The notes under the pieces are model-generated. The model was not told where the DNA came from and made no database searches. It worked only from the letters and a program-made list of their open reading frames with translations. The position numbers and the translations under genes are program-made. Below, piece by piece: positions 14,185 to 56,039 of a stretch of DNA of 64,000 nucleotides (positions are counted from its first letter, which is position 1; each line of letters begins with the position of its first letter). The stretch spans positions 147,365 to 211,364 of IMG/VR virus record IMGVR_UViG_3300035145_003993; one strand, given 5' to 3'.

Positions 14185-14193
14185 TATAACACC

Positions 14194-14916: not shown

Positions 14917-15374
14917 AAACTAAAATTGTCCTCAAATTCTTTAATAGGTACGTCTAAATATTCTTCGTTAGAGTCTATATCATATACATTTGATTTTATA
15001 TCAACATTAAAAGACTTTTTATATTTAACTTTTTTATTAGGTGGAAAAATTTCACCTTTATTATTTTTACTAGGTTTCTTAGATTCTTTATCTTTTTCGT
15101 TTATTTGATAATAAGATTTTGACATTTCTAAACTATCAAGGCCTTCACCCGGAAATAGTAATCTAACAAAAAATTCACCACCTTTTTCAATAACATTAAT
15201 TACTGTATATAAAAAACCCGCTTTGTCTTTAACTTTTAAACCTCTAGCAGAAGCTATTAAGTCATTATCATCTTTGTCTCTAACTTCAATTTCATTTAAA
15301 TTTAAATAATGATCAATTCTTTTTTCATATTCTTCTTTTAAAAGATCAAATATTTGATTACTATTATTTTTCAT
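14913..15374 (-). CDS. hypothetical protein, 153 aa
   Basis: ORF coupled by ATGA overlap to the SOD gene. Confidence 0.7.
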   Translation of the reverse strand: MKNNSNQIFDLLKEEYEKRIDHYLNLNEIEVRDKDDNDLIASARGLKVKDKAGFLYTVINVIEKGGEFFVRLLFPGEGLDSLEMSKSYYQINEKDKESKKPSKNNKGEIFPPNKKVKYKKSFNVDIKSNVYDIDSNEEYLDVPIKEFEDNFSL

Positions 15375-15473
15375 TTAATTTATCTTTCTTGTGTAATACG
15401 CTAATAGAAAGCATACTAAAATTATATATATTATATATTAATTATATTTGTTTATTTAATCAATACAGGTAAA

Positions 15474-15890
15474 TTATTCTTTGTATTGTTCAACAATAAT
15501 AGAAGACTGTTTAAGAATACAAACTCCTGACATATCTCTATATTCTTCTTTGTATACAACCTTCTTGATTCCACTATTAATAATTGCCATAGCACAGTTT
15601 TCGCAAGGACTTAATGTTATATACATTACCTTATCTTTTGGATTATTATAATCAAGTTTTAAAAGAGCATTTATTTCAGCATGCAACAATCCGCTACATC
15701 CAGGTTCACTAGATTTAGGTTCGTTTAGCATTCCAGAAGCTCGTCCATTATATCCTAAAGAAAGTACTTGTGTGTTATCTGACGTTACTATAAGTGCTCC
15801 AACTTTAAAATCTGGATGATGACTTCTTTGTGCAATTGTTTCTGTCATTTTCATCCATATTTTATCCCATGAGGGCCTATTTATATTCAT
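15474..15890 (-). CDS. dCMP deaminase
   Basis: VGALIV, GYNG, HAEINA, PCENC zinc motifs. Confidence 0.93.
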   Translation of the reverse strand: MNINRPSWDKIWMKMTETIAQRSHHPDFKVGALIVTSDNTQVLSLGYNGRASGMLNEPKSSEPGCSGLLHAEINALLKLDYNNPKDKVMYITLSPCENCAMAIINSGIKKVVYKEEYRDMSGVCILKQSSIIVEQYKE

Positions 15891-15911
15891 AACTATTTTC
15901 TCCGAGGTTTT

Positions 15912-16388
15912 ATGTCTTATTTGTTATTAGAAAATTATATTAAATCTATTATAGAAAAAAATACAATTAAAGAACTACATGTTTTTGATTTTGATATGAC
16001 TTTATACAATCATAATAAAAAAGATTGGTTTGAAGATGTCATGTTAAATTTAAAAAAATCTTTAAAAGATCCAAGTGTAAGAGTTATTTTATGCACAGCA
16101 AGAGAAAAAAGCGAAAATTTTATATTAAAAACTGAGAAGTTGCTTTCTACACGTAAAATGTCTCTTGAAGACTTTAATGAGTGTTATTTTAAATCAATAC
16201 ATAGAAAAGAAAAAACTCCGATTTATAAATCTAATGTCATTTTAGATGAAGTTAGTTCTAACACTAATATTGTAAAAGTAAAGTTTTGGGATGATCGTGA
16301 AGATACTCTTAATCAAGTTAAAAAAGATTTAAAAAAATATAACGAAAATATAATTTATATTCCTGTTAATCCTTTAAAAATTGCATAA
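15912..16388 (+). CDS. HAD-superfamily phosphatase (PNKP / Swiss-Army-Knife-like HAD)
   Basis: VFDFDMTLY motif I, LCTAR motif II, FWDDR motif IV; GAGG RBS; one of very few plus-strand genes. Confidence 0.75.
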   Translation: MSYLLLENYIKSIIEKNTIKELHVFDFDMTLYNHNKKDWFEDVMLNLKKSLKDPSVRVILCTAREKSENFILKTEKLLSTRKMSLEDFNECYFKSIHRKEKTPIYKSNVILDEVSSNTNIVKVKFWDDREDTLNQVKKDLKKYNENIIYIPVNPLKIA

Positions 16389-17228
16389 ATCTTTTTTCCA
16401 AGATAATATTTTTCTTTCAAGTTTTAAACTTTTATCTTTTTCATTTGCGTCTTTCAAAGTTATTCTATTCCAAGGGTATAATTTTCCTGTATTAGAAGAA
16501 GTAGATATTGTTTCTATTCCTTTAATAGAATATAAATAAATTTTACTGTCATCAATTTCAACGTTTCTTTTAAATTTTAAAACTTTTGGTGGTCTTCCCA
16601 TTTCAGACATTTCACTATCTTGTATTAATAATTCTTTACTAGTCCAAGGAATTGCAAATTTAATTGCGTCTTCTTTATAAGGAGTTACATAAGAGTATTT
16701 ATTTAAGCAATTAAATCTACTTTGACTTCCATGATAATATACTCTTTTCGAAATTTCAGGTATATAATATTGAGGTTTTACTTTAAAAGGAATAAAAATA
16801 TGGATTTCTTTTTTATCATCGGGACAAGAAAACCATAGTTTGTAAGCATCTGCAAATCCTTGTATTCCTTTACAGAATATTTTTTCTTTTCTCGCAACGA
16901 ATAAAAATAAACATTTTTCAATTTCATTAGGTAAAAGTTTAAAGTAATATGAATATTCTCTTCTCTGTAATATTTGATCAGGGCTAGATTCGTTTGTTGC
17001 ATTAAAAAAAGAAGCTCTTAGAAAAGATGTATTTTTTTCATGATAAGGAAAATATTTTCTAATCTCTTTTTCAGCTAATTTAAGTCTATGTCCTTCTATG
17101 ACTTTATCGTATCTTAAAGGTCTTAAAACTTTTTTATATTTTTTGTCTTTTGAAATAAACCAAATATCTGATGTTAGAAACTTTGTACCTAAGTTTTTAA
17201 TTTCAATAGGGACATTAATTTTTTTCAT
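16374..17228 (-). CDS. hypothetical protein with possible ADP-ribosyltransferase-fold C-terminal domain
   Basis: YYHGSQSRF...YVTPYKEDAIKFA resembles the H-G-[ST] / Y-x-[TS]...A-x-x-[FY] ART core. Confidence 0.4.
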   Translation of the reverse strand: MKKINVPIEIKNLGTKFLTSDIWFISKDKKYKKVLRPLRYDKVIEGHRLKLAEKEIRKYFPYHEKNTSFLRASFFNATNESSPDQILQRREYSYYFKLLPNEIEKCLFLFVARKEKIFCKGIQGFADAYKLWFSCPDDKKEIHIFIPFKVKPQYYIPEISKRVYYHGSQSRFNCLNKYSYVTPYKEDAIKFAIPWTSKELLIQDSEMSEMGRPPKVLKFKRNVEIDDSKIYLYSIKGIETISTSSNTGKLYPWNRITLKDANEKDKSLKLERKILSWKKDLCNF

Positions 17229-17273
17229 TATTTCTCTTTTTATTATGTTTTAATTTTATTTTAAATTATTATA

Positions 17274-18134
17274 TTAAGACAATATTGCTTTGACATAATC
17301 TTTAATTAATTTGTGAGCATTTATAACTGTTTTACCTTGTACTCTTGACATCGTTAAAGAGTTAATAATCATGTTTCTATTAGCCAAACTAAGTTGATCA
17401 GGTGAAAGTATAAACTGCCTAAAACATTCTGCAAAAAACTCTCTTTCATCTGTAGATCCATATTCTGAAGGCATGTGTTTCATAATTGACTCAATCATGT
17501 TTTCTATTTTAGATAATGGTGTAAACTTATCAGATAACTCATAATCTTTACAAATTTGAGAAGAAATACTAGAAAAGCCACCTTCAGAATTATTATCAAG
17601 AAAGTCAGCAAAATCATAAAATGATTCTTCAGCATCGTTTAAAAGTTTTTCGTTTCTTTCATCATCATTATTGTTTTCTATTATATCTTTTATAGACTTA
17701 AGCTCTCTAATAATATTTGTATAAGTTTCTCCTATTAATGTTATATACTCACTTGAATCTGATGAAACAAAATTAACGTGTATACAATGACCTATTTCAT
17801 GTACTAAAGTGTTTATAAGTTGTTCTTCATTTTTAAATTTACTTAAATCAAAAACAATAGCTTTAATATCAGTTTCTAAAAAAGCTTTCCAGTTATGTAA
17901 AGCTGATTTAAAATTTTTATCAATTTCAGCTCTTTCTTTATTACCCTTAACAATGACAAGACTTTTAAACAATTCTGATAATGGTGTGTTTATTCTGAAC
18001 TGTTTAAATTTAATATTAACGTTTTCTAACCCACTAATCAAATTATTTGTCATATAAAAATCATCTTCTGCATTTTTTGAAAAATAAACTTTTATACCAT
18101 AATAGTTTTCTATTCTCGTAAATTCAATATTCAT
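17274..18134 (-). CDS. zinc metallopeptidase (HEXXH, anthrax lethal factor/MtfA-like)
   Basis: TLVHEIGHCIH plus downstream YGSTDEREFFAECFRQF..P..L third-ligand motif. Confidence 0.75.
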   Translation of the reverse strand: MNIEFTRIENYYGIKVYFSKNAEDDFYMTNNLISGLENVNIKFKQFRINTPLSELFKSLVIVKGNKERAEIDKNFKSALHNWKAFLETDIKAIVFDLSKFKNEEQLINTLVHEIGHCIHVNFVSSDSSEYITLIGETYTNIIRELKSIKDIIENNNDDERNEKLLNDAEESFYDFADFLDNNSEGGFSSISSQICKDYELSDKFTPLSKIENMIESIMKHMPSEYGSTDEREFFAECFRQFILSPDQLSLANRNMIINSLTMSRVQGKTVINAHKLIKDYVKAILS

Positions 18135-18739
18135 ATATCACCTAACTTGATTAAATGTCTAATTAAATTATTATCTTTCTCTTTAAAAGTCGTATAATGT
18201 TTTGCACAACGTGGCTCGTACATTCCTTTTGAACCAACTCTCTCTTCAGCAGATGCATTATTTATATCAAACATAGCTTCAGTAAAATAAGCATCTTGAT
18301 CACAATCAGTACAGACTGCTGGGCATATTTCTATTTTTGTTGCCCAAGGCATTATATTTTTTATATTCTCAAAAGGTACCTCGTTTGCGTCTAATTGAAT
18401 TGATGACACAATTATATTAATACCTTTACGATATAAAGAAATTAAAACAGAATCAATATCATGTATCATAAATGCTTCATCTACAGCAATCACTGTATTC
18501 GAATTATACATGTCTTCATTGACATAGCACAATATTTCTTCAGCATGATTAATACAAAATGCAGGATATGTTGCTCCTGTATGTGTGCTTATAGCTTCTT
18601 TCGTATAACGATTATCTCTTTTAGCTTTAAATGCTATTACTTTACGACCTTTATATAAAGATCGGTCTATATCTGACATTAGTTTTGTCGTTTTAGATCC
18701 GAACATAGGCCCTGTATATATTTTAAATGTTGGATTCAT
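18131..18739 (-). CDS. tdk: thymidine kinase (type II)
   Basis: GPMFGSKTT P-loop, VDEA Walker B, AVCTDC and YEPRCAKHY zinc/lasso motifs. Confidence 0.93.
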   Translation of the reverse strand: MNPTFKIYTGPMFGSKTTKLMSDIDRSLYKGRKVIAFKAKRDNRYTKEAISTHTGATYPAFCINHAEEILCYVNEDMYNSNTVIAVDEAFMIHDIDSVLISLYRKGINIIVSSIQLDANEVPFENIKNIMPWATKIEICPAVCTDCDQDAYFTEAMFDINNASAEERVGSKGMYEPRCAKHYTTFKEKDNNLIRHLIKLGDI

Positions 18740-19791: not shown

Positions 19792-20001
19792 ATGTACCAA
19801 ATTTTAGAAAATTATATACAACTTGTATTTGAAAACGAAAAAAATAAAAACAAAACGTTTAAAGATATACTTAATAGTTTAAAAAATAGTCAAAATCCTA
19901 AAAAGGTACTAAGAAATACAGATCCTATAGAAAGAAATACAGATCAAATAGGATTTGACCAATTAATTAAAAAATCTAGTAATTCTAATCAAACGCGTTA
20001 A
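19792..20001 (+). pseudogene. short plus-strand ORF (69 aa), probable gene remnant with leader motif
   Basis: AAGGA RBS, MYQILENYIQLVFE leader, internal 14-bp direct repeat aagaaatacagatc (19911 and 19932), 3' end overlaps the dnaE-C stop. Confidence 0.4.
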
Positions 20002-23000
20002 TCTTTTTAAGCTTAGCTAAACTTGATGACATACCCCAGTTAACATCATTACTAATATCAGCCAACCAAGTTGTAAATTCAATTTCACCTTCCATATCTC
20101 CCCATACTCGAAGCCATCCACTTCGATTATCAATATCGACGCATTTCCATCTCATAAATGATTTACCGTTTTTAGTTGTTTTTCTAATAACTTCTGTAAC
20201 AGTAAACCATCCAATTCCACGCTCACCTTTTGGTATATCAAAAATACTATTGATTTGCTTCTGTTTTAGTTTTTTAACTAAGCTTGGTGGAAACAATAAA
20301 TCGTCATTTGCATCATTACTGAGTTCAAAATAGTTTTTAATTTTAGTACTTCTTGACCAATCACTAACAACTCTGTATTGTGAGATTAACTTTTCGACAA
20401 TTGGAATGATTTCTTCACCATTTTTATTTGCTTTTTTAATAGCAGTTTTTGTCATTCCAAAGCTTCCTTTCTTTAAAATCATATAATTATCCAAGATTAA
20501 ATCATGCATTTGTTTGTGATTGTCTAGTGTTCCATCTTGAAATTCTTGGAGTGACTTAAATGCTTCCATCTTTGTTAGTGATGAAAAAGCTGTTTTATTC
20601 ATTTTTGAATGTTTCCATTCTCCTTCTTTATTGTAAAAAAGATCTTGTAAATTATTATATGGTCTATTTACAAATATTTCTTCAACAGCTTTGTCACCTA
20701 CTCCTTTAAGAGATGTCAACGGAGGAACAAACGATTTTAAATCTTCTGAATATTCCCATTGAGATCCTGAGTGATTTATATCAATTGCTGATATGTCATA
20801 TCCTAGTGCCTTAATTTCTGCAATTACTTTGGACATTCCTTTAGGATTACCATTTTCTGATTGTAAAACAGTTGCTAGCCAGTCTGTTTCGTAGTGTGTA
20901 TGAAGCCACGCAGCGTAATATGAGTCGATTGCATAAGAAACAGCATGACTTTTATTGAAACCGTAAACAGCAAAACCTTCTATTTCTTCCCAAAGTTTTT
21001 TAGATATATGTTCGGGTACATCATTAATTTCTTTTGCACCTTTAATAAACTTTTCTCTTGCAATTGTTTTTTCATCTTTTTTATTTCCCATTGTTGCGAG
21101 ATTATTCTTAACAAGGGTTTTTCTCAGCTTATCAGCTTCACCTGGATCAAAACCTGATAGTTTTTGTGCAAGTAACATAAATTGCTCTTGAAATACAACG
21201 TAAGAAAATGTTGGTCCTAAAACTTCTTCGATAATCGGATGATCGTATTTAATTTGTTCTGCGTTTTGTTTAGATTTAACATATTTTTTATGAACATTAG
21301 CTTTAAGAGGTCCAGGACGATAAATAGCAGTTAAAGCTGCTAATTCTTCAATACTTTCTGGTTTAGCTTCTAATGAAAAGTTTCTAGCTCCTGTATTTGT
21401 AAATTGGAATATTCCTACAAATCTTCCATCATGATATACATGCTTCCAGACATCTTGATCATTTTGTTCGTGAAATCTACAATTTAAATGTTTATCAAAG
21501 AATTTTTTAGCATCACTAAATTGTGGATTATTATTACCCTCCTTTTTAAGGATTCTATAAATACAATTTTCAATATCTTTTAATAAGGATAAACCTAAGA
21601 AATCAAATTTAATAAAACCATTATCTTCTAAGTTTCTAAAATTTAATCCTTCTGACCATGGTGTTTGTAATTCTCCTCTTACACCTACGATAGGCATAGT
21701 TGTTTCTAAATGTTCAGGATCAGCTACTAACACACCCCCTGCATGACGACCAATTGCTCTATTCTGCATAAACAAAGAAGCAATATGAGTTTCAACTTCA
21801 GGATATCTTTCCATAAAATCTTTATATTCTGGAGAATACTTTTTACAATCTTCATGCTTAAGAACAAAAACAGATTTTTCTTGATCGTCACCTTTTGCCA
21901 TTTTCATAACTTGATCGTGAAGAGGACCAGTTACTTTATTTACTTCATCATACGGAATATCATAAAACTTAGATATATCTTTAATAAGAGACTTAAGCTT
22001 TAAAGTATTAAAGTTAGAAACAGGAATAACAGCATCGTTTCCATATAATTCTTTTGCAGCATTAATTAACTCATCACGATCACCAGCATCTGTATCAATA
22101 TCAGGCCATGAAACCCTATGCCTTCCTAAGAATCTTGCCCAAAGAAGATCGTATGGAAGAGGGTCAACTTGTGTAATGCCTAATAAATAATTAACTAAAG
22201 AGCCAGCTCCTGATCCTCTTCCTGGCCCTAATAAAGTTTTCTTTTCAGCCTTCTTAAAAATTTCATACATCGTAATAAAATATGCTTCGTGACCAAGATA
22301 CTTTATATCTGATAATTCTTCTTTAGCACGATCAACATAAACTTGGTTTGTATGAAAACCATGGCTAACGAGTGAATCTTTAACTAAAGAAGATAAGTGT
22401 TGAAAAGGAGTTTTATTTGGAACGTTTATTGTAGGTAGTTTAACTCCTGTATCAATCCAAGTATCTTCAAATTCATTCCAAACGATATCATGAGTTCGAT
22501 TAATAGCATCACGAACTAATTCTTCATTACCTTTATAAAATTCATAAGTAGGATATGAATCAAGAAATTCTTCCCACATTTGAGAAGCATTTTTTGGATA
22601 TAATTCACACTTAAGATCTTCAAATTCTGGAAGAGAAAGATTATCTCTTTTTCCTAACCAACCAAGTTTTTTATATAATTCTCGAGCTTGCCATTTTTCA
22701 TTTGAAGGGTAATGTGAATCTGCTGTACAAATAAGAGGAATACCTGTTAATTTATGGTGTTCTATAAGATAATCATTAACAGTATGCTGTTTTTCTAATT
22801 TATTAAACTGTAATTCAAGTTTAAAATTGTTTTCTCCAACACAAGAAACAAACCTATCTGTTAGATTTAATAATTCTTTCTGAATTTGTTCACGTGATTG
22901 ATTATGAACTTCACCTCTTAAAATACGATTACTATAAATACCACCAAGGCAGTTGTGCACTAAAATATTGTTAGCAAAAAAATTGTGATTACCTTCAACA

Positions 23001-23080
23001 GTAATGTCGTAAACGTCAGAAGTCTCATCTATTTCTTCAATAATTTCAACTTCAATAAATTTTGTTTGAATGTCTTTCAA
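19985..23080 (-). CDS. dnaE: DNA polymerase III alpha, C-terminal part (IntC 43 aa + 988 aa C-extein)
   Basis: TTG start with AGGA RBS; LVHN|CLGG junction; ADSHY, GRGSGAGSL, PDIDTD, GRHAGG, KFDFLGL, FNKSHA motifs; C-terminal OB-like region. Confidence 0.96.
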   Translation of the reverse strand: MKDIQTKFIEVEIIEEIDETSDVYDITVEGNHNFFANNILVHNCLGGIYSNRILRGEVHNQSREQIQKELLNLTDRFVSCVGENNFKLELQFNKLEKQHTVNDYLIEHHKLTGIPLICTADSHYPSNEKWQARELYKKLGWLGKRDNLSLPEFEDLKCELYPKNASQMWEEFLDSYPTYEFYKGNEELVRDAINRTHDIVWNEFEDTWIDTGVKLPTINVPNKTPFQHLSSLVKDSLVSHGFHTNQVYVDRAKEELSDIKYLGHEAYFITMYEIFKKAEKKTLLGPGRGSGAGSLVNYLLGITQVDPLPYDLLWARFLGRHRVSWPDIDTDAGDRDELINAAKELYGNDAVIPVSNFNTLKLKSLIKDISKFYDIPYDEVNKVTGPLHDQVMKMAKGDDQEKSVFVLKHEDCKKYSPEYKDFMERYPEVETHIASLFMQNRAIGRHAGGVLVADPEHLETTMPIVGVRGELQTPWSEGLNFRNLEDNGFIKFDFLGLSLLKDIENCIYRILKKEGNNNPQFSDAKKFFDKHLNCRFHEQNDQDVWKHVYHDGRFVGIFQFTNTGARNFSLEAKPESIEELAALTAIYRPGPLKANVHKKYVKSKQNAEQIKYDHPIIEEVLGPTFSYVVFQEQFMLLAQKLSGFDPGEADKLRKTLVKNNLATMGNKKDEKTIAREKFIKGAKEINDVPEHISKKLWEEIEGFAVYGFNKSHAVSYAIDSYYAAWLHTHYETDWLATVLQSENGNPKGMSKVIAEIKALGYDISAIDINHSGSQWEYSEDLKSFVPPLTSLKGVGDKAVEEIFVNRPYNNLQDLFYNKEGEWKHSKMNKTAFSSLTKMEAFKSLQEFQDGTLDNHKQMHDLILDNYMILKKGSFGMTKTAIKKANKNGEEIIPIVEKLISQYRVVSDWSRSTKIKNYFELSNDANDDLLFPPSLVKKLKQKQINSIFDIPKGERGIGWFTVTEVIRKTTKNGKSFMRWKCVDIDNRSGWLRVWGDMEGEIEFTTWLADISNDVNWGMSSSLAKLKKINAFD
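22952..23080 (-). mobile_element. Split intein C-fragment (DnaE), 43 aa
   Basis: Blocks F/G: VYDITVEGNHNFFANNILVHN, followed by Cys+1 at 22949-22951. Confidence 0.95.
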
Positions 23081-23099
23081 AATTATTCCTTTTTATTAG

Positions 23100-23128
23100 A
23101 ATATAATACAATTAGTTAATATTTACAC
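23100..23128 (-). promoter_or_regulatory. Promoter GTGTAA-N17-TATATT upstream of dnaE-C
   Basis: -35 box lies in the last codons of the endonuclease gene; -10 box is 19 nt before the TTG start. Confidence 0.6.
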
Positions 23129-24062
23129 TTTCATTAATTAAATCAATTGTATTATCAATTTCATTTTCCCATATAATCAAGTAGTTATAGTTTCTTTTTT
23201 TTGCTATCTTCATTTTGTAAGAATCAGCATTCCAAATATCACCTGCTTTTATTTTTCCTCTTGGGAAATCAAGAATGCTATTTTCATTATATAGAGAAGG
23301 GTGTGCGTGCCAAAATAGACCATGGCATTCAATGATTAAATTAAACTTTGGCAGATAAAAATCATATATGTAACATCTTTTGTTGTATAATAATTCATCT
23401 TTTGTCAAATTAATTCGATATTGAATAGAATAGTCAATGTTATTTTCTCTTAATAATCTTTCAATTCTTTTTTCTGTTTTAGGTTGTGATGTTTTTTTAA
23501 GAGCACCAATTGCACCTTTAACAGCTCTTTCTGAAATTATTGCATTTGCATTATCCTTACTTAATCCTTTCTTAAGCCAAAACTCAATGCAAAATGGAGA
23601 ATTTGATCGTTTATAGTTAGATAAACTTTCTTTTGCATCTTCAATATTTTCCGTTTTTTCTATCCAATACTCTAAAGTTTGTTTTTGGTTGTAAGGTTTA
23701 CCTGACTTTTTTCTAGTTTTAACTGTTCCTTTTTGTCCTTTTAAAGAAGTCTTCAAATAGTAACTTTCAATTTCTTTTATTGAAGTGTTTTTTGGAAATT
23801 TAAACTGACTTCTGAATGCTGTTGAAGTTTTTTGATTATCTACATGAAGCTTAAAACCGATTTTGTCTTTTAAAAGAATAGAAAAAGTTTGCTGTGATAT
23901 ATTTAACTCATTAAAGCATTTTCTATTGTCACGATTAATCATTTGATATAACATTGAAAACGAGTAAAGTTTATTAATAAAACCTTGTATTTCTTCTTTT
24001 GAGTAATAAGAAAAAAGTATTTCTTCTCTAATTTTCCATATATTTGTTTTTTTTGTTTTCAT
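23112..24062 (-). CDS. free-standing homing endonuclease, Vsr-like/DUF559 (EDxHD-type), inside the fractured dnaE
   Basis: SQPKTE...YIYDFYL...IIECHGLFWH...ADSYK...LIIWENE; position between IntN and IntC; AGGAGG RBS. Confidence 0.85.
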   Translation of the reverse strand: MKTKKTNIWKIREEILFSYYSKEEIQGFINKLYSFSMLYQMINRDNRKCFNELNISQQTFSILLKDKIGFKLHVDNQKTSTAFRSQFKFPKNTSIKEIESYYLKTSLKGQKGTVKTRKKSGKPYNQKQTLEYWIEKTENIEDAKESLSNYKRSNSPFCIEFWLKKGLSKDNANAIISERAVKGAIGALKKTSQPKTEKRIERLLRENNIDYSIQYRINLTKDELLYNKRCYIYDFYLPKFNLIIECHGLFWHAHPSLYNENSILDFPRGKIKAGDIWNADSYKMKIAKKRNYNYLIIWENEIDNTIDLINESVNIN

Positions 24063-24099
24063 TATATTATCCTCCTAGGCACATATTATATATTCTGCT

Positions 24100-25017
24100 T
24101 CAGAGGTTAATATTAATAATTATATCACCTTTAACAATATCTTTTGTATCAATCCATCCTTTGTCTTTAACAAGAACACGATGATCAGGTGTAAGTTTGA
24201 TTTCGTTACCTTCTTTGTCTTTAATTCTCATAAGCTTAGCACCTCCTCGGGTTTTGTCACCCCAGATTACTTTTTTAAATTCAGCTTTGCTAGTATATTC
24301 ATTATAAGAAAGAACTTGGATTTCTTCACCTTTATTAAATCTTTCTACAACTTCTTTAATAGATAGATTTCCAGATGAAGTTTGTAAAGTTGTGTCAGGA
24401 TGAAGACAAGCTGTAGATATGTGTAATCCTTCACCATGTTCTTGAAGCATTTGAAAATCAATACGTGGGTATCTATAAAAACCATATTTATACGATTTTT
24501 TAACTAAAGTAAATAAATTGTGAAGACCTTTTTGGTTTTTTGCTGTAACTACCAAATGATATCTTCTTTTCCACTCATCTTTAAGGATATCAACATTTTT
24601 TGTTTCATCTTCGTCTTCAACAACTAATCCGCCACTTTCATCATCTGCGTCAATATCAACTTTTTCTTTTGATTTCCTTTCAGCAGCAGCGGCAGATTTT
24701 GCGTCTTTTACTGCTTGTTTGTGAGCAGCATATTCTTCAGACCATTGTTGAAGTGAAGGAACAAAATAAAATTCAACTCCATAAATTTGTCTATAATTCC
24801 TTCCTGATTTTTGCATTCTAATTGTATGAGATCTTGCATGAGCAAGACCATTACCGTTACCATGGTCTGTTAGTGCCCATGCATCCATACCCTGAGATTC
24901 AGACAAAACAAAATCAATATGATCAGATGGGTATCCTAATCCATCGAATGTTGAAAACGTGCTGTGTGCATGAAGACCGACAAATCTATCTGGTGGTGTT
25001 ATTAAATCAATAGACAA
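24100..25017 (-). CDS. dnaE: DNA polymerase III alpha, N-terminal PHP part (203 aa N-extein + IntN 102 aa)
   Basis: LHAHSTFSTFDG, ALTDHGN, YGVEFY, HLVVTAKNQKG, YRYPRID PHP motifs; ISTA|CLHPDT junction; TTG start. Confidence 0.96.
   Translation of the reverse strand: MSIDLITPPDRFVGLHAHSTFSTFDGLGYPSDHIDFVLSESQGMDAWALTDHGNGNGLAHARSHTIRMQKSGRNYRQIYGVEFYFVPSLQQWSEEYAAHKQAVKDAKSAAAAERKSKEKVDIDADDESGGLVVEDEDETKNVDILKDEWKRRYHLVVTAKNQKGLHNLFTLVKKSYKYGFYRYPRIDFQMLQEHGEGLHISTACLHPDTTLQTSSGNLSIKEVVERFNKGEEIQVLSYNEYTSKAEFKKVIWGDKTRGGAKLMRIKDKEGNEIKLTPDHRVLVKDKGWIDTKDIVKGDIIININL
24103..24408 (-). mobile_element. Split intein N-fragment (DnaE), 102 aa
   Basis: Cys1 block A CLHPDT, block B TPDH, then a stop codon. 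Confidence 0.95.
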
Positions 25018-25045: not shown

Positions 25046-25294
25046 TTATTTTTCTGATTTTAAAATGTTAATAACTTTTATATCACGAGTTTTAATATCA
25101 TATATTTTATTACTATTTACATCAAGCATTTTATAACTAAAAAATCTTTTATTTCCGTATTTTGTTTTATTTTCAAATAAAAAATTTCTATCTAAAACCA
25201 AAGCTGTTCTCGGACCTGAAAATTGATTTCTAAATATTTTATGTTCAAATGTTACAAGATCAGAAACTTCTAATCCTTTTGAATAAGAAGACAT
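25046..25294 (-). CDS. hypothetical protein, 82 aa
   Basis: ORF with AAGGA RBS. Confidence 0.65.
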   Translation of the reverse strand: MSSYSKGLEVSDLVTFEHKIFRNQFSGPRTALVLDRNFLFENKTKYGNKRFFSYKMLDVNSNKIYDIKTRDIKVINILKSEK

Positions 25295-25341
25295 ATAAAT
25301 TCCTTATTTTTATATTTCATTTAAATGTTTTTTTATAGTTT

Positions 25342-25370
25342 ATTATATTTATTAAATAATTAATTTACAC
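25342..25370 (-). promoter_or_regulatory. Promoter GTGTAA-N17-TATAAT heading the dnaE operon
   Basis: Perfect match, intergenic. Confidence 0.75.
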
Positions 25371-25394
25371 TTAAAAAATACAATAAGGTTTATA

Positions 25395-25493
25395 ATGAAA
25401 ACTAAAGAAATATTAAGAGAATGGAATTTATTTTTAAAAAATATATTGAGACTCTTATTTCTTAAATATTGTATTATACTAATCGTTCAATAA
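25395..25493 (+). pseudogene. 32-codon plus-strand stub with leader-like start
   Basis: AAGG RBS, MKTKEILREWNLFLKN...; resembles the start of ORF 36142-36564 (MKNIYEMFNQWRQFLLDE). Confidence 0.3.
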
Positions 25494-26657
25494 TTTTAAA
25501 GTTCTTTCTTGATTAAATCTCATAACTTTTCCATATTGTAATTTAAAACTTTCAACACAGTTTACAATATTATTTGGACTTTGAGCATCTTCACAGTGTG
25601 TATTAAAAAAATCAATTAAAGTTTCTAATGATTTTAAACCTCCACCAAGATTCCAATAACATTCTCCTGCGAACCACATTCTAGATCTATTAGGCATCCA
25701 CCTATTTTTAATACACTGTTTTATTTCTTTGTTAAGGTAATCATTTTTTGTATTTCCATTCATAATATCTTTTTTTGATAAAACGGGAGTAAAAGTATTA
25801 TTTAATAAATTGTTATAAGACTTTTCATCTAAAAGTTTTTTTGAAATACTATCTACACTATCTAAAAAACTTATTTCTTTAATTCTACATTTTCTAATAC
25901 AAATTTCTCTAAATGCTAATTGTCTAAGAATAGGTATAATTGGATTATCCTTTTCAATAAACCTTGGAGAAAGTGATAAAACTAAATGTGTTATTACCCT
26001 TGGATCAATTAAACCATGATGTAAAAATTTAGAAAGTTTTGTACTTCCTTCTCTTTCATTTCTTGTTTTATGATAAGATAAAACCTTTTCTTTGAATCTT
26101 TTTAAAATGTTACAAACATTTTTATGAGTTTTCAAAGATAAATTATGATTAATTTTATATAATTCGCCTATACTCCCAAAATCATTTATTTTATTATAAT
26201 TACAAAATATTTCTTCTTTCTTTAGTCTATTTTTTGTCCAATAGATCCATCTACTTTTTGCTGTCATTTTTGTACAAGACTCAATATAAGAGTCAGAATC
26301 GACTTCTTCTACATTAATATTATTAAATTTTAATTTTTCTGAAAAAAGAGGTTTATCGTAATATACTTTTTCGATATTTTCATTTTTACAAAAATCTTCA
26401 ATTAATGCAACAGGATTTTTTGATTTAATTATTTTAAGATTTAAATCATAATTTTCTTTTAATCTGCTTGAAAAATAATTTAATGATTCGTAATAAAATA
26501 GATTATTATTATTTTTATAATAATTTTTATTATTATCATTTAAATAATAATTTGAAATATATACAACACAAATATTTTTATAAGAAGATATAGCTTTTTT
26601 AAAAATAAAACTGTTTGTTCTAAAAGAATGATCAATTATAATTAGACATTTAGACAT
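25479..26657 (-). CDS. phrB: DNA photolyase/cryptochrome family protein (compact, divergent)
   Basis: YHKTRN...STKLSKFLHHGLI, RQLAFRE, GNT, WMPNRSRMWFA, EDAQSPNN FAD-binding motifs. Confidence 0.8.
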   Translation of the reverse strand: MSKCLIIIDHSFRTNSFIFKKAISSYKNICVVYISNYYLNDNNKNYYKNNNNLFYYESLNYFSSRLKENYDLNLKIIKSKNPVALIEDFCKNENIEKVYYDKPLFSEKLKFNNINVEEVDSDSYIESCTKMTAKSRWIYWTKNRLKKEEIFCNYNKINDFGSIGELYKINHNLSLKTHKNVCNILKRFKEKVLSYHKTRNEREGSTKLSKFLHHGLIDPRVITHLVLSLSPRFIEKDNPIIPILRQLAFREICIRKCRIKEISFLDSVDSISKKLLDEKSYNNLLNNTFTPVLSKKDIMNGNTKNDYLNKEIKQCIKNRWMPNRSRMWFAGECYWNLGGGLKSLETLIDFFNTHCEDAQSPNNIVNCVESFKLQYGKVMRFNQERTLKLLND

Positions 26658-26691
26658 ATAAACTCTTTTTATTAATTATTATTTATTTTTT

Positions 26692-26754
26692 AATATAATC
26701 ATTATTATTCTTATTTACACATAAAACTATAATTAATTAATATTTAATTTACAC
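26692..26754 (-). promoter_or_regulatory. Tandem promoters GTGTAA-N17-TATAGT (26726-26754) and GTGTAA-N17-TATATT (26692-26720) upstream of photolyase
   Basis: Two copies, both with 17-nt spacers, intergenic. Confidence 0.65.
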
Positions 26755-26772
26755 GCAAAAGTATGGTATAAG

Positions 26773-27003
26773 CTAAGTCTCAGATTTAGTTACCCACAGA
26801 CCGTCTTGATTTTCTAAATCCATTGTTTCTCTAGACGATCCATTTAAGTAAACAATTAGACCTTTAACAAAGTAATGATCTTGAATAATTTCTGTAACTA
26901 AACAGTTATTTTTTATCCTTTCACCATAAAAAAATATATCAATCATGTCACCTTCTTTTAACTGTGATACTTCGTGTATTTCATTTTTATAATTACTGGA
27001 CAT
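26773..27003 (-). CDS. hypothetical protein, 76 aa
   Basis: ORF on main strand. Confidence 0.6.
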   Translation of the reverse strand: MSSNYKNEIHEVSQLKEGDMIDIFFYGERIKNNCLVTEIIQDHYFVKGLIVYLNGSSRETMDLENQDGLWVTKSET

Positions 27004-28174
27004 TGATTTTAGGTTTTCCCCATCTAAGTGTTATTTGTGTATTGTTATTTAACATGTTTGTGCAAATATTAAAAGGTTCTACGTCATAGAATTTTAAAAT
27101 CTTATAAAGATCATCATACAAATAATCTATTCCTTCTTCCAAGATTTGGGTACCATTAAAAACATTTAAATCACCTTCAGCAATTACAGGACCTATCCTA
27201 CACATTATCTCTTCTATAATTGCATTAAATGCTGATTCAACTTGATTTGCATTAACAACGAAAGAGAATTCATTAGGAATTGTATTGAGTGTGTTTCCGC
27301 TTATAGACTGTAGTGCGCTTGTATTTGCATTGTCTACACCTAAAGTATATACAGTAATACAAGGATCTATTGCTGTAGAGTAAATGCAATTGTTATCATT
27401 AATATTTCTTATGTTGTTTTGAACAAAAGACTGAGAAGGCCCTGATCCTTCATTTGGCGATCCATCTGATATTAAGAGAATGTAATAAGACTCGTAGTTT
27501 GTCGTCTGTATTTGTGTCATTGCTTCTTGTAAAGGTGCTATAAAGTTTGTTCCACCTCCCGGACTTCTATTATTAACAATTGAAAGAACAGATTGCTTAT
27601 GCTGTTGATTTTTTCCTATACTTGAAGAAACTATTATATTACTATTGTATAATATAACAGAGTAACTTAAATTAAAATCAGAGTTAACAAATTGACTAAC
27701 TGTATCTCTAAGTTGAACTATTCTGTTTCCACTCATTGAACCACTATAATCTAAAAGCATTATTACAGCTGCATCTATTAAGTCAACGTCATGAACTTCT
27801 TCAGGGACAGTTATTATAACTGACTTGGTAGTTTGTCCGCGTCCTGGGTTATAAGAAGAAGTTATTCCGTATTTTCTATTACAATAGTTTTCAACACTAC
27901 ACTCTAGTCCTAGATCTATACATTGAAAGTTTGGTGTAACGTTAGTTGAAAGTGACGAAGCGCAATTATTTAAAAAATTAGGTGTACAAATTTCTTCAGT
28001 ACTATTTGTCTCAATAATAGAAATTCCTAGATTTACACTACAAGAATCTAAAACTTGTTTTTCTTCCAATATGTTTAAAGATATTCTACCGTATTGTATT
28101 GTTATAAATGCTAAAGTTGATAACACAGCAGACAATAACATAATAGTTAGTGCTGCAAATCCTTTGTTTTTCAT
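26993..28174 (-). CDS. TadG-like membrane-anchored vWA domain protein
   Basis: N-terminal KG|FAAL prepilin-like site and hydrophobic helix, QVLDSCS; intact MIDAS (DYSGS, GGTNF, LISDG). Confidence 0.75.
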   Translation of the reverse strand: MKNKGFAALTIMLLSAVLSTLAFITIQYGRISLNILEEKQVLDSCSVNLGISIIETNSTEEICTPNFLNNCASSLSTNVTPNFQCIDLGLECSVENYCNRKYGITSSYNPGRGQTTKSVIITVPEEVHDVDLIDAAVIMLLDYSGSMSGNRIVQLRDTVSQFVNSDFNLSYSVILYNSNIIVSSSIGKNQQHKQSVLSIVNNRSPGGGTNFIAPLQEAMTQIQTTNYESYYILLISDGSPNEGSGPSQSFVQNNIRNINDNNCIYSTAIDPCITVYTLGVDNANTSALQSISGNTLNTIPNEFSFVVNANQVESAFNAIIEEIMCRIGPVIAEGDLNVFNGTQILEEGIDYLYDDLYKILKFYDVEPFNICTNMLNNNTQITLRWGKPKINVQ

Positions 28175-28194
28175 GATTTATCTCTCCATATATT

Positions 28195-28223
28195 ATAATA
28201 TAAGGATTTGTTTTAAATTACAA
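28195..28223 (-). promoter_or_regulatory. Promoter variant TTGTAA-N17-TATTAT upstream of the vWA gene
   Basis: One mismatch in each box, 17-nt spacer. Confidence 0.45.
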
Positions 28224-28988
28224 ATTAGACTTTTTTAGATAAATAAGATGTCTTGTACCATGATAATTTTTATTTTCTATATTATCAATAGTCCAGTAAT
28301 GATTTGTTTTTTTAATGTTTCTATAAAAATCTTTCATTAATAAAACGTCTATATTAACGCCTTGATTTTTTAATATATCAACAGCTAATAAGTTTGAATT
28401 AAATTTTCTATCTCTACGAATAGCCTTTAATTCAACATATTTATCTTCATCAGGATGGTAAAAATCTGGCGTATATTGCTTGTCTCTTCCTGCATAATTT
28501 ACAGTAAAAGTTTTATGTTCATAAATATAAGGCTTATTTGTTGCTTCGCACCATCTTGCATAATCTGCCTCTAATCCTGATTTGAAAAAATAATTACTTG
28601 GTAAATCTCTTCTAAATCCTAATCTTCCATTTGAAGGTATTTCGTGTAAACCACTACTTTGAGCTTTATATTGGCAATCTTTACTACAATATTTAGTAGC
28701 TTGTCCTATTGGCTTTTGATATGATTTTCCACAAAAATTACAATTTAAATCGATTCTTTCATGACGATTTTCTTTTAAATAACATTCTCGTCTACAATAT
28801 TTTTTATCTCTTTTAGCTTTAAATTTATTGTTACAAGAAAGACAATTTTTATAAACATATTTTGAAGAATTTTTGTCTTTACAGACCTTTGAACAAAACT
28901 TTGATGAAGAAGCTCTTGATGCTGGTTTTTTATAAATAGATTTACACTCTTGACACGTTAACTCTACTTGATTACTTTTTCTAGGCAT
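28218..28988 (-). CDS. PD-(D/E)xK endonuclease (T7 endonuclease I-like) with N-terminal CxxC/CSxxC zinc-finger repeats; probable free-standing homing endonuclease
   Basis: KSGLEAD...YIYE...YTPDFY...YVELK; three CxxC...CSxxC-type units. Confidence 0.75.
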   Translation of the reverse strand: MPRKSNQVELTCQECKSIYKKPASRASSSKFCSKVCKDKNSSKYVYKNCLSCNNKFKAKRDKKYCRRECYLKENRHERIDLNCNFCGKSYQKPIGQATKYCSKDCQYKAQSSGLHEIPSNGRLGFRRDLPSNYFFKSGLEADYARWCEATNKPYIYEHKTFTVNYAGRDKQYTPDFYHPDEDKYVELKAIRRDRKFNSNLLAVDILKNQGVNIDVLLMKDFYRNIKKTNHYWTIDNIENKNYHGTRHLIYLKKSNL

Positions 28989-29053: not shown

Positions 29054-29263
29054 TTATAAGACATTAAAAGACATTATATTGTAAGGAACAATTTCAATTT
29101 CATTATTAATTAACAAGTAAATCATTGCATAAAAATTATTATCTTTTTTAATGTCTATTACTAAACCTACTTTTTCTTTTTCGTTCGAATATAAAAAATT
29201 ATATTTAATTATTTGACCTATTTTTAAATCTAAAATTAATTTTTTATTATTCTTAAACTCCAA
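29054..29263 (-). CDS. hypothetical protein, 69 aa
   Basis: Small ORF overlapping the fpg stop. Confidence 0.55.
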   Translation of the reverse strand: MEFKNNKKLILDLKIGQIIKYNFLYSNEKEKVGLVIDIKKDNNFYAMIYLLINNEIEIVPYNIMSFNVL

Positions 29264-39501: not shown

Positions 39502-40563
39502 TTATCCTTGACAGCTTAAACATTCATCAGGATCAGCGAAATCTTGTAACTTATCTTGCTTAACCTTCTGACTAACCTTTTCAGCTGAAGCTCCTGCGTT
39601 TGTCCTTAGATAATATAATCCTTTTAACTTCTTTTTCCAAGCTCTAATATGTACTGCATTAACATAAGATTTATCAGTACCAGCGGGAAAGAATAAATTA
39701 ACACTTTGACCTTGGCAAATAAATTCTTGTCTATCACCTGCGTGATCTATAATCCATCTTTGATCTAATTCAAATGCTGTTTTAAATACTTCTTTATGCC
39801 AATCTGACATGTATTCAAGGTGTTGAACAGATCCTTCTGCTAAGATAATAGATTTCCATTGTTCATTCATCCAAGATTCAATATCAATTTTTTCTACATT
39901 GTCAGCATACTCTCTTAAAACTTTTTCTAAGTGATGATTTTTCACTAAATAAGAACCTACTCTTGTTCTATGTGTATATGCATTACTTTTCCAAGGTTCA
40001 ATAGATGGTGAAGTCCCTGCAATAATAGAAGAATTAGCATTTGGAGCAATTGCTAATAGATGAGAATTCCTAACTCCGTAACCAGATCCATCAGGACATT
40101 CACCTTTTTTAATCGCCAACTCTTTTGTACGCTGTTTTGCTTTTTCTTTAATTAATGAGAATATATTAATATTTGTTGCTTTTGCAATCCCTGATTCAAA
40201 CGGAATATTTTTTGATTGAAGATAGGAGTGAAATCCCATTGCACCTAAACCAAGTGATCTTTCTCTCATAGCGGAAAATTTTGCTTTGTGCAAATAGTCA
40301 GGAGCATTTTCAATAAAAAATTGTAGGACGTTATCTAAATACTCTATTAAATCTTCAACAATATTTGTGTCTTTCCATTCATCAAACTTTTCAACATTTA
40401 GTGAGCTTAAACAACATACTGCACTTCTTTCAGGAGATGTTGCCAAATGGATCTCATTACAATTGTGAACGAGCATGTTATTTGCAAAAAAATTTTTATT
40501 GTCTTTAACAGTTATGTCAAAAACAGGTTCTTTTGTTTCTCTTTTAATTATTTTTAATCCCAT
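39502..40563 (-). CDS. nrdA: ribonucleotide reductase alpha, C-terminal part (IntC 34 aa + 319 aa)
   Basis: LVHN|CNEI junction, CCLSSLN, RSLGLGAMG, AIAPNANSS, QGQSVN, LYYLR, C-terminal CLSC. Confidence 0.96.
   Translation of the reverse strand: MGLKIIKRETKEPVFDITVKDNKNFFANNMLVHNCNEIHLATSPERSAVCCLSSLNVEKFDEWKDTNIVEDLIEYLDNVLQFFIENAPDYLHKAKFSAMRERSLGLGAMGFHSYLQSKNIPFESGIAKATNINIFSLIKEKAKQRTKELAIKKGECPDGSGYGVRNSHLLAIAPNANSSIIAGTSPSIEPWKSNAYTHRTRVGSYLVKNHHLEKVLREYADNVEKIDIESWMNEQWKSIILAEGSVQHLEYMSDWHKEVFKTAFELDQRWIIDHAGDRQEFICQGQSVNLFFPAGTDKSYVNAVHIRAWKKKLKGLYYLRTNAGASAEKVSQKVKQDKLQDFADPDECLSCQG
40462..40563 (-). mobile_element. Split intein C-fragment (NrdA), 34 aa
   Basis: VFDITVKDNKNFFANNMLVHN, followed by Cys+1 at 40459-40461. 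Confidence 0.95.
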
Positions 40564-41302: not shown

Positions 41303-41360
41303 ACTATCTCCTTATGTTAGTAAATGAATTTCAACATTAAATATACATCTAACAATCAAA

Positions 41361-52306: not shown

Positions 52307-52314
52307 TTTATTAT

Positions 52315-56030: not shown

Positions 56031-56039
56031 TGTAATTCC

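What the first reader, a model, noticed from the sequence alone, without database searches (positions are those of the whole stretch)
26993..28174. Phage-borne TadG-like pseudopilin/vWA protein
It has a class III-like signal (MKNKG|FAAL plus a hydrophobic helix), a Tad-type QVLD segment, Cys-rich spacers and an intact MIDAS. This resembles the TadG/CpaL tip adhesins of Tad pili. A phage copy could enter the host pilus to alter adhesion or block pilus-dependent superinfection, and it hints at a Tad-piliated host.
Basis: partly seen in the sequence, partly recalled or inferred. Interest (0 to 1): 0.6.

Follow-up and report, generated by a model that had tools for sequence, protein, structure and literature searches.

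The report
Phage-encoded TadG-like tip pilin
An uncultured marine T4-like jumbo phage carries a gene copied long ago from a bacterial Tad-pilus operon: a pilin-like stalk fused to a metal-dependent adhesion (vWA) domain, which probably lets the phage change the tip of its host's pili during infection.

Summary
Window 26993-28174 (minus strand) is a 393-aa ORF. It has a prepilin-like N-terminus, a modelled pilin module, a vWA domain with a complete MIDAS, a small C-terminal beta domain and 10 invariant cysteines.

The TadG reading is largely supported:
- Pfam's Tad model does not hit the phage protein itself.
- The nearest cellular homologue (34-37% identity, full length) is the last gene of complete tad operons.
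- 11 of 42 wider relatives match Pfam Tad.
- The N-terminal modules alone align by hhalign.
- The N-module model matches solved minor pilins at Z 6.4-7.2, a middling score.

The gene sits on a 211-kb T4-like viral contig with no other tad gene and no prepilin peptidase. The phage copies form one clade nested among cellular tad-locus proteins. The gene lies in a variable island, is absent from that position in many relatives, and diverges faster than its neighbours.

The most likely mechanism is inferred, not shown: the host's Tad machinery processes the protein and places it at the pilus tip, changing or blocking tip function. Prophage FimU minor pilins do this in Pseudomonas.

Processing, the host and the benefit to the phage are untested. 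I rate it a new variant of a known kind, of moderate to high interest.

The parts
26993..28174 (-). ORF of 393 aa (P0001): a TadG-like modular minor pilin with a vWA domain. The stop codon is at 26993-26995.
28182..28187 (-). GGAGAG ribosome-binding site, 7 nt upstream of the ATG
   Evidence: sequence read
28160..28174 (-). Leader M1-G5 (MKNKG). The putative prepilin-peptidase site lies after G5.
   Evidence: G at -1 in 25/25, K/R at -2 in 25/25, leader length 4-24 aa. Cleavage is inferred, not tested.
28094..28159 (-). Hydrophobic alpha1-N segment, residues 6-27
   Evidence: Kyte-Doolittle window means up to 2.1. It forms part of helix 2-56 in both models.
28046..28060 (-). K39-Q40-x-L42-D43: the 'QVLD' motif, which aligns with the Q..AD motif of Tad-type N-termini
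   Evidence: Q40 is invariant and K39, L42 and D43 are nearly invariant in A1. Q40 and D43 align with the Q..ADA consensus of Tad-positive relatives.
27785..28174 (-). Pilin module, residues 1-130: a long alpha1 helix, a short helix and a 3-stranded antiparallel sheet
   Evidence: AF2 pLDDT 84-87. VIA-align Z 6.4-7.2 to EpsI, GspI, PilV, S. sanguinis PilB, PilE and PilX.
27203..27772 (-). vWA domain, residues 135-324
   Evidence: Pfam VWA E 1.3e-13. Foldseek matches to ANTXR and CMG2 vWA domains and to pilus-adhesin vWA domains, E about 1e-11.
27737..27751 (-). MIDAS D142-x-S144-x-S146. T209 (27548-27550) and D237 (27464-27466) complete the site.
   Evidence: All five are invariant in A1. D142, S146, T209 and D237 are invariant and S144 nearly invariant in A2.
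26996..27202 (-). C-terminal beta-rich domain, residues 325-393, with invariant C325 and C371
   Evidence: AF2 strands at 336-392. The alignment to tad-locus homologues runs through this domain to residue 390.
26773..27003 (-). 76-aa ORF that overlaps the vWA stop by 11 nt. It has no signal or membrane segment. It co-occurs with the vWA gene in relatives but is not shown to work with it.
   Evidence: No Pfam or PHROG hit. It resembles other small ORFs of the region.

Best explanation
**What it is.** The gene encodes a TadG/CpaL-class modular minor pilin that a lineage of uncultured marine T4-like jumbo phages acquired once from a bacterial tad (Flp/Tad, type IVc pilus) operon.

**Shown here**
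- The domain layout: a prepilin-like signal, a pilin module, a vWA domain with a complete MIDAS and a C-terminal beta domain, with conserved cysteines.
- Homology to the terminal gene of tad operons.

**Inferred mechanism**
1. The protein inserts in the host inner membrane by its N-terminal helix, with the cysteine-rich part in the periplasm.
2. The host's TadV/CpaA-type prepilin peptidase cuts it after G5.
3. It joins the host's TadE/TadF minor pilins in place of the host's own TadG, at the tip of the Tad pilus.
4. This either gives the tip a different vWA head or stalls tip assembly.

**Likely benefit to the phage.**
- The infected cell's pili stop serving as receptors for pilus-tip-binding competitors, or for the phage's own progeny. 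This would be superinfection exclusion of the kind shown for prophage FimU.
- A change in the infected cell's adhesion is the second option.
For: **Architecture**
- Searches give the signal, the pilin fold, the vWA domain with MIDAS and the 10 invariant cysteines.

**Homology**
- P0001 against P0124: 34% identity over residues 5-390, E 9e-78.
- P0124, L013 and L014 end complete tad operons. P0176 (Tad plus VWA) does the same.
- 11 of 42 relatives match PF13400 Tad.
- hhalign on the N-modules alone gives 99.5% (E 4.5e-23) and 95.3% (E 2.4e-8).
- Language-model neighbours of residues 1-135 are Tad/TadG clusters. The scores are 0.83-0.86, so this is a lead only.

**Origin**
- In a quick maximum-likelihood tree the phage clade is monophyletic (SH-aLRT 100). 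It nests inside the cellular tad-locus clade (100), with the distant Tad-positive proteins on the other side.

**Selection on the cleavage site**
- G at -1 and K/R at -2 are invariant although leader length varies from 4 to 24 aa.

**Accessory, fast-evolving character**
- The gene lies in a variable island. It is present in 15 of 27 related loci that have enough flank.
- It is 63% identical between two phages whose ThyX, NDT and DnaE are 77-83% identical.
- Its identity is decoupled from ThyX identity among relatives.

**Precedent**
- Prophage FimU minor pilins enter the P. aeruginosa type IV pilus and block tip-binding phages. PilA-like genes also occur in virulent phages (PMC12952977).
- CpaL and TadG are modelled at the Tad pilus tip together with the minor pilins (PMC11870444 and PMC12075869).

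**Expression hint**
- Contigs from RNA libraries of one marine sample cover the gene at about 97% likeness.
Against: - Pfam Tad (PF13400) does not hit the phage protein itself, even at E up to 10.
- The site after G5 lacks the E/F at +5/+6 described for Tad pilins (PMC11870444). Cleavage is therefore uncertain.
- The 211-kb contig (84% complete) has no peptidase A24 and no other tad homologue. Everything depends on an unknown host.
- No cellular homologue is closer than about 37% identity. The closest lie in 5.7-6 Mb genomes of 42-48% GC, one of them titled Myxococcales. The phage is 27% GC. Fit to the real host's TadE/TadF cannot be judged.
- RNA-library contigs do not prove transcription.
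- The fold matches to pilins have middling Z, below 8.
- The tree is the quick version with a midpoint root and compositional heterogeneity.
Confidence: 0.5

Rival explanations
1. Pilus-independent membrane protein. The N-terminal helix is an uncleaved signal anchor. The disulfide-rich vWA head works in the periplasm on its own, for example by binding an envelope component or an incoming phage part to block superinfection, as T4 Imm and Sp do. On this reading the TadG ancestry only supplied the scaffold.
For: - The phage has no tad genes or peptidase.
- There is no E/F at +5/+6.
- Identity to any cellular TadG is at most 37%.
- The phage is T4-like by its large terminase, and T4-type phages make early membrane-anchored exclusion proteins. 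That last point is established knowledge and is also mentioned in PMC12952977.
Against: - G at -1 and K/R at -2 are invariant across leaders of 4-24 aa. This is hard to explain for a plain anchor.
- The whole pilin module is conserved with tad-locus proteins, not just the helix.
Confidence: 0.2
2. Adhesion gene for the infected cell. The phage TadG enters the pilus tip mainly to give the infected cell a new or stronger MIDAS-dependent attachment to particles or to other cells, rather than to exclude other phages.
For: - The MIDAS is fully conserved.
- vWA tip proteins mediate adhesion or surface sensing: CpaL, S. sanguinis PilB and PilY1 (PMC11870444).
- Structural neighbours include the pilus adhesins SpaC, RrgA, GBS104 and Mfa5.
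Against: - No ligand is known.
- The patchy distribution and faster, decoupled divergence fit a competitive arms race better than a conserved adhesion role.
- The benefit of adhesion to a lytic phage is unclear.
Confidence: 0.15
3. Poison subunit. The phage TadG binds the host's TadE/TadF or the assembly platform but cannot prime fibre growth. Tad pili are then lost altogether.
For: - Minor-pilin complexes prime assembly, and loss of CpaL lowers piliation in Caulobacter (PMC11870444).
- The phage protein is strongly diverged from cellular TadG.
- Truncated phage PilA proteins were proposed to act this way (PMC12952977).
Against: A full-length vWA domain with an intact MIDAS, and a C-terminal domain kept under selection, would be unnecessary for a mere poison.
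Confidence: 0.1
4. Virion protein: a vWA adhesin on the phage particle.
For: Some PHROG families with vWA-like matches are annotated as tail proteins (phrog_15205, E 0.0024).
Against: - The gene lies among replication and nucleotide-metabolism genes (ThyX, NDT, Fpg, DnaE), far from the head and packaging genes.
- A prepilin-type hydrophobic N-terminus and homology to tad-operon genes do not fit a virion protein.
Confidence: 0.05

Closest known systems
TadG (Aggregatibacter and others) / CpaL (Caulobacter crescentus): the large minor pilin of Tad (type IVc) pili
   Same: - It has the same order of parts: a hydrophobic prepilin-like N-terminus, a pilin-like module and a vWA domain with MIDAS.
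- The closest cellular homologues occupy the TadG position at the end of tad operons.
- There is no Glu at +5, as in CpaL (PMC11870444).
   Different: - It is encoded by a phage, with no other tad gene present.
- It is smaller: 393 aa, against 626 or more residues for CpaL by the domain ranges in PMC11870444.
- The vWA domain is continuous, not split by two beta-barrel domains.
- It has extra invariant cysteines.
- Pfam Tad does not reach it.
PilB of Streptococcus sanguinis (PDB 7B7P): a bimodular type IVa pilin with a vWA module
   Same: - Both have a pilin module followed by a vWA module with MIDAS.
- The N-module model aligns to the PilB pilin module at Z 6.9, rmsd 2.9 over 86 residues.
- The whole model matches 7b7p and 7ba2 by Foldseek at E about 1e-9 to 1e-8.
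   Different: - PilB belongs to a different pilus class (type IVa, in a monoderm).
- No sequence-level relationship was found.
- The phage protein's sequence relatives are tad-locus proteins.
Prophage-encoded FimU (P-FimU) and phage PilA-like proteins (PMC12952977)
   Same: - A phage carries a single structural subunit of its host's type IV filament, without the machinery.
- P-FimU is diverse and acts at the pilus tip to block tip-binding phages. This is the functional model proposed here.
   Different: - P-FimU is a small type IVa minor pilin of temperate Pseudomonas phages.
- This protein is a Tad-class tip pilin with a vWA head, in uncultured marine T4-like jumbo phages.
- Its function is untested.
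PilY1 / PilC tip adhesins of type IVa pili
   Same: Both are vWA-containing proteins displayed with the minor pilins at the pilus tip (PMC11870444).
   Different: PilY1 and PilC are not pilins: they have no class III signal or pilin module, and they are much larger.

Membership tests
TadG/CpaL-class Tad minor pilin | N-terminal Tad-type segment recognised by Pfam PF13400 (Tad) | tested here: inconclusive
   - There is no direct hit on P0001 at E up to 1, nor in the genome at E up to 10.
- 11 of 42 full-length relatives match PF13400, best E 2.3e-7.
- The N-module profile aligns to those relatives at 95.3% probability, E 2.4e-8.
- Language-model neighbours are Tad clusters, at scores below 0.9.
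TadG/CpaL-class Tad minor pilin | Full-length homology to proteins encoded at the TadG position of tad operons | tested here: met
   - P0124 shares 34% identity over residues 5-390, E 9e-78.
- L014 shares 37% and L013 36%.
- The operon content was verified by Pfam.
TadG/CpaL-class Tad minor pilin | The gene lies in a tad locus, with TadV, TadE/F, TadA/B/C and RcpA/C | tested here: not met
   - The phage contig has no Peptidase_A24.
- It has no homologue of the other ten L014 tad-operon ORFs tested.
- It has no other class-III-like ORF.
- The contig is 84% complete.
TadG/CpaL-class Tad minor pilin | vWA domain with a complete MIDAS | tested here: met
   Pfam VWA E 1.3e-13. D142, S144, S146, T209 and D237 are conserved.
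TadG/CpaL-class Tad minor pilin | Processing by the Tad prepilin peptidase and presence in Tad pili | not testable with these tools
   The only evidence is the conserved K/R-G|F site. The G-X4-E/F motif is absent.
Type IV pilin / pseudopilin superfamily | Class III signal: a short basic leader ending in Gly, followed by about 20 hydrophobic residues | tested here: met
Type IV pilin / pseudopilin superfamily | Pilin fold: an extended alpha1 helix packed on an antiparallel beta sheet | tested here: met
   - The AF2 models show helix 2-56 and three strands, pLDDT 84-87.
- About 20 of the top 50 PDB representatives are pilins or pseudopilins, at Z 5.0-7.2.
- Z below 8 is middling on its own. The enrichment for pilins is what carries weight.
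Type IV pilin / pseudopilin superfamily | Glu at +5 | tested here: not met
   Position +5 is T/V/I/L/A in 25/25. GspK-type and CpaL-type tip subunits also lack it (PMC11870444), so this does not exclude membership.
Phage-encoded pilus-subunit mimics (P-FimU type defence) | Incorporation into the host pilus and block of pilus-dependent phage adsorption | not testable with these tools
   This rests on analogy with PMC12952977. The supporting pattern is an accessory, fast-diverging gene.

The most novel reading that the evidence does not exclude
During lytic infection, a widespread group of marine jumbo phages swaps the tip subunit of the host's Tad pilus for its own MIDAS-bearing version. This gives the infected cell a phage-chosen surface-binding specificity, for example to hold it on particles or next to fresh hosts. 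Different phage alleles would encode different specificities. On this reading the gene is a viral tool for steering host attachment behaviour in the sea, not only an exclusion device.
Probability: 0.12. Interest if true: 0.8.

Novelty: new variant of a known kind. Interest (0 to 1): 0.55.

Why it matters
Phage genes that replace single parts of host pili have only recently been shown to work as anti-phage defence, with FimU in Pseudomonas prophages. This finding would extend the idea in three ways:
- to the Tad pilus class;
- to a vWA-bearing tip adhesin;
- to virulent-looking T4-like jumbo phages that recur in seawater metagenomes (164 protein clusters, 13 studies).

It also gives a concrete handle on the unknown host, which should own a Tad system. 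And it offers a compact natural TadG variant of 393 aa, with a contiguous vWA domain, for studying how Tad tip complexes assemble.

Tried and rejected
- **Phage GenBank collection.** There was no tblastn or megablast match to the protein or to 20 kb around it. No cultured phage carries it.
- **PDB by sequence.** Only generic vWA domains matched.
- **Foldseek and ESM Atlas with the whole model.** The results were dominated by vWA domains. The nearest Atlas cluster is the phage family itself. I therefore folded the pilin module alone.
- **The search for related loci with a 14-sequence alignment.** It failed for lack of a conserved stretch. I repeated it with 4 sequences.
- **GTDB taxonomy of the closest cellular genomes.** None was returned. 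Only the record titles are available ('uncultured Myxococcales', 'Myxococcota').
- **Whole-record search of five related contigs that lack the gene at the syntenic site.** It found nothing, but those records are only 10-34% complete.
- **The 76-aa overlapping ORF as a partner.** Rejected. It has no signal, so it would sit in a different compartment. It also belongs to a family of small ORFs scattered in the region.
- **Promoter scan.** Not above chance in this AT-rich DNA, so no timing class is assigned.
- **Careful tree.** It did not finish. The quick tree was used.
- **Complex prediction.** Not used. The host's TadE/TadF are unknown and I do not claim a specific pair binds.
- **Literature.** No paper on a phage-encoded TadG was found.
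Full report
**1. The observation**

Window 26993-28174 (minus strand) is an uninterrupted ORF of 393 aa. A GGAGAG ribosome-binding site lies 7 nt before its ATG.

Pfam finds a vWA domain at residues 137-313 (E 1.3e-13). NCBIfam and PHROGs add only vWA-type matches.

A word-index search found 164 protein clusters. The 120 best listed are 54-100% identical; nearly all are 390-410 aa long and a few are shorter fragments. They come from marine metagenomes, on contigs of up to 256 kb.

An alignment of 25 of these homologues (A1) shows:
- an invariant G5, with K/R at -2 and F/I/M at +1;
- about 22 hydrophobic residues after the glycine;
- a leader that varies from 4 to 24 aa, and never Glu at +5;
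- Q40 invariant, and K39, L42 and D43 nearly invariant;
- ten invariant cysteines;
- an invariant MIDAS (D142-x-S144-x-S146, T209, D237).

My own crude scan of all ORFs of 40 aa or more in the genome found no second protein with such an N-terminus.

**2. The genome**

The window is the last 64 kb of a 211,364-bp IMG/VR viral contig. The contig has 27% GC and CheckV rates it 84% complete.

It encodes a major head protein, a portal and a large terminase. The nearest cultured relatives of the terminase are Flavobacterium phage immuto (40%) and Microcystis phage Mel-JY01 (38.5%). T4-like cyanophages and Pelagibacter phage Mosig follow at about 33%. This is a distant T4-like jumbo phage of unknown host.

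The gene sits among replication and nucleotide-metabolism genes: ThyX, nucleoside deoxyribosyltransferase, Fpg/Nei, DnaE, RNR, DnaB and a UvsX-like recombinase. It is far from the head and packaging genes.

**3. Structure**

AlphaFold2 on A1 gave a confident model (pLDDT 86.9) with four parts:
- one long helix (residues 2-56);
- a short helix and a three-stranded antiparallel sheet (82-129);
- a Rossmann-like vWA domain (135-324);
- a small beta domain (336-392).

The whole model matches vWA domains. These include ANTXR/CMG2, the pilus adhesins SpaC, RrgA, GBS104 and Mfa5, and the vWA pilin PilB of S. sanguinis.

I then folded residues 1-130 alone, using an 8-row alignment that includes cellular homologues (A5; pLDDT 84). 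Compared with 48,161 PDB representatives without Foldseek, about 20 of the top 50 rows are type IV pilins or pseudopilins:

| Match | PDB chain | Z |
|---|---|---|
| EpsI | 2ret_A | 7.2 |
| GspI | 3ci0_I | 7.1 |
| PilV | 5v23 | 6.9 |
| PilB pilin module | 7b7p_A | 6.9 |
| PilE | 4noa | 6.5 |
| PilX | 2opd | 6.4 |

The Z values are middling, and unrelated folds are mixed in. The enrichment for a rare fold class is what counts here.

**4. Relatives**

A profile search of 1.84 billion representatives gave 1,969 hits. Beyond the phage family there are full-length relatives of 400-457 aa.

Pfam on 42 of them found VWA in all. Tad (PF13400) was found in 11 and TadE in one.

Their genomic context is decisive.
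- **P0124** is 34% identical to the phage protein over residues 5-390 (E 9e-78). It is the last gene after RcpC, secretin, a TadZ-like ATPase, TadA, TadB, TadC and two small ORFs.
- **L013 and L014** are the best two hits in 185,579 species genomes. They share 36-37% identity over residues 2-390 and 5-390.
  - L014 is titled 'uncultured Myxococcales' and L013 'uncultured bacterium'.
  - Their GC is 42-48%, and their genomes are 5.7-6 Mb.
  - Both show the same ORF layout as the P0124 locus.
- **The L014 operon** was verified by Pfam. It runs Peptidase_A24, TadE, RcpC, secretin, TadZ-like, TadA, TadB, TadC and a TPR protein. A 100-aa ORF that looks like a lipoprotein by eye follows, and then the homologue.
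- **P0176** is more distant. It carries Tad plus VWA and ends an equivalent operon.

Cut before the vWA domain, the phage N-modules still align by hhalign. Against the P0124 group the probability is 99.5% (E 4.5e-23). Against the distant Tad-positive group it is 95.3% (E 2.4e-8). In these alignments the conserved glycine and the Q..D motif are in register.

Some close cellular relatives (P0129, P0130) are not next to tad genes within the DNA available.

**5. Origin**

In a quick maximum-likelihood tree of 52 proteins, the 12 phage sequences form one clade (SH-aLRT 100). That clade lies inside the clade of cellular tad-locus proteins (100). P0128 and P0133 branch first (94), and all distant Tad-positive proteins are on the other side.

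This fits a single, old capture from a bacterial tad operon. The gene's GC is now 31%, against 42-48% in the nearest cellular loci.

Caveats: the root is a midpoint root, the composition is heterogeneous, the careful search did not finish, and the exact sister group is unresolved.

Among L014's eleven operon ORFs tested, only the TadG-like one has a homologue in the phage genome. Neither Peptidase_A24 nor Pfam Tad is found there.

**6. Behaviour within the phage lineage**

In two 254-256 kb relatives the order is conserved: ThyX, NDT, small ORFs, an epimerase, a 259-aa ORF, the vWA gene and then a 76-aa ORF with the same 11-nt overlap. A 552-aa ORF on the opposite strand and DnaE follow.

I fetched 55 related viral loci by ThyX. 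The vWA gene is present in 15 of the 27 that have at least 7 kb of flank. In the others the space between the 256-aa ORF and DnaE differs:
- it holds other cargo, for example nine tandem ~160-aa paralogues in L123;
- or it holds nothing, as in L141 and L142.

The records lacking the gene are fragments (10-34% complete). Absence is therefore shown only for the syntenic site.

Between the window and L093 the protein is 63% identical, while ThyX, NDT and DnaE are 77-83% identical. Across relatives its identity is decoupled from that of ThyX:

| Locus | ThyX identity | vWA identity |
|---|---|---|
| L096 | 85% | 61% |
| L150 | 66% | 77% |
| L134 | 76% | 39% |

So this is an accessory, relatively fast-evolving and probably exchanged gene. 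That pattern is expected for a surface or competition function. The same was reported for phage FimU proteins (PMC12952977).

**7. Occurrence and expression**

Near-identical DNA occurs in seawater, marine and wetland metagenomes from 13 studies.

Contigs from three metatranscriptome libraries of one marine sample cover much of the gene and its neighbours at about 95-99% likeness. For example, one contig spans 27504-28258 with 18 differences.

This is compatible with transcription but does not prove it. DNA can be present in RNA libraries, and contigs show neither strand nor level.

**8. Mechanism**

Shown:
- the domain layout;
- the conserved peptidase-like site;
- the intact metal site;
- the cysteine pattern;
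- descent from tad-operon TadG-like genes.

The cysteine pattern suggests an oxidising, extracytoplasmic location. That location is itself an inference.

From established knowledge of the family, TadG/CpaL-type proteins are modelled at the Tad pilus tip. They form a complex there with the small minor pilins TadE/F (CpaJ/K) (PMC11870444 and PMC12075869). TadG was reported in fibre preparations. Tip-most subunits such as GspK and CpaL lack the usual Glu or aromatic residue after the cleavage site.

Inferred: the phage protein uses the host's peptidase and assembly machinery, takes the TadG place and changes or blocks the tip.

The best functional precedent is P-FimU. It enters the P. aeruginosa pilus without harming it and blocks phages that bind the tip. 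The same paper notes PilA-like genes in virulent phages and recalls T4's early exclusion proteins.

My confidence:
- about 0.85-0.9 that this is a TadG-class homologue with a pilin module;
- about 0.5 that it acts through a host Tad pilus;
- about 0.3 that exclusion of other phages is the selected benefit.

The rivals are a pilus-independent periplasmic anchor protein, an adhesion gene for the infected cell, a poison subunit and a virion protein.

**9. Comparison and novelty**

It works like TadG/CpaL and like PilB of S. sanguinis.

By descent it belongs to the TadG-like proteins of tad operons. It fails two formal membership features: a direct Pfam Tad hit and residence in a tad locus. It is also smaller than CpaL and has an undivided vWA domain.

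Phage-borne single pilus subunits are known (FimU, PilA). I found no report of a phage-borne Tad-class tip pilin or of a vWA-bearing one. I therefore rate it a new variant of a known kind.

**10. Limits**

The host is unknown. 'A Tad-piliated host' is a prediction, not a finding.

Processing, localisation and phenotype need experiments.

Noticed in passing
window 19985-25017 (minus strand): DnaE (DNA polymerase III alpha) is a 'fractured gene'.
- 24100-25017 encodes the PHP domain plus an N-terminal intein half.
- 23112-24062 is a free-standing HNH-type or homing-endonuclease-like ORF.
- 19985-23080 encodes a C-terminal intein piece plus the polymerase core.
- Relatives L093 and L094 have one unsplit 1191-aa DnaE.
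   Followed up: partly
window 39502-42527 (minus strand): The ribonucleotide reductase large subunit is split in the same way.
- 41361-42527 is the N part plus an intein N-half.
- 40544-41302 is a GIY-YIG endonuclease ORF.
- 39502-40563 is an intein C-piece plus the C part.

That makes two split-intein genes with free-standing endonucleases in one window.
   Followed up: partly
window 25046-28988, compared with L096-L150: The stretch between the conserved 256-aa Cys-rich HNH-like ORF (28218-28988) and DnaE is a variable island in related phages.
- Some carry the vWA gene plus the 76-aa ORF.
- Some carry other cargo. L123 has nine tandem ~160-aa paralogues at 13826-18258.
- L141 and L142 have nothing between the two flanking genes.
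   Followed up: partly
window 29054-29263, 26773-27003, 25046-25294: Several 69-82 aa ORFs look like one family of small soluble proteins, sharing a G-D-L/M-I/V ... I-G-I/L-I/V pattern. Many copies occur in relatives. They have no Pfam or PHROG hit. One of them overlaps the vWA gene's stop by 11 nt.
   Followed up: no
window 25479-26657 (minus strand): A conserved 392-aa ORF with no Pfam or PHROG hit. ORFs with very similar N-termini stand in the same region of related loci (L125 17300-18559, L144 14203-15396).
   Followed up: no
window 4048-6471, 9276-12410, 49772-62063 (minus strand): Five ORFs of 807-1143 aa have no Pfam hit. An 844-aa ORF (49772-52306) carries an SLT lytic transglycosylase domain. 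These are possibly virion or injection proteins that lie apart from the head module.
   Followed up: no
L014 9551-9853; P0124 and P0176 loci: In the bacterial tad operons, a ~100-122 aa ORF always directly precedes the TadG-like gene. In L014 it is lipoprotein-like, with a Cys after a hydrophobic leader, and it has no Pfam family. The phage has no counterpart.
   Followed up: no
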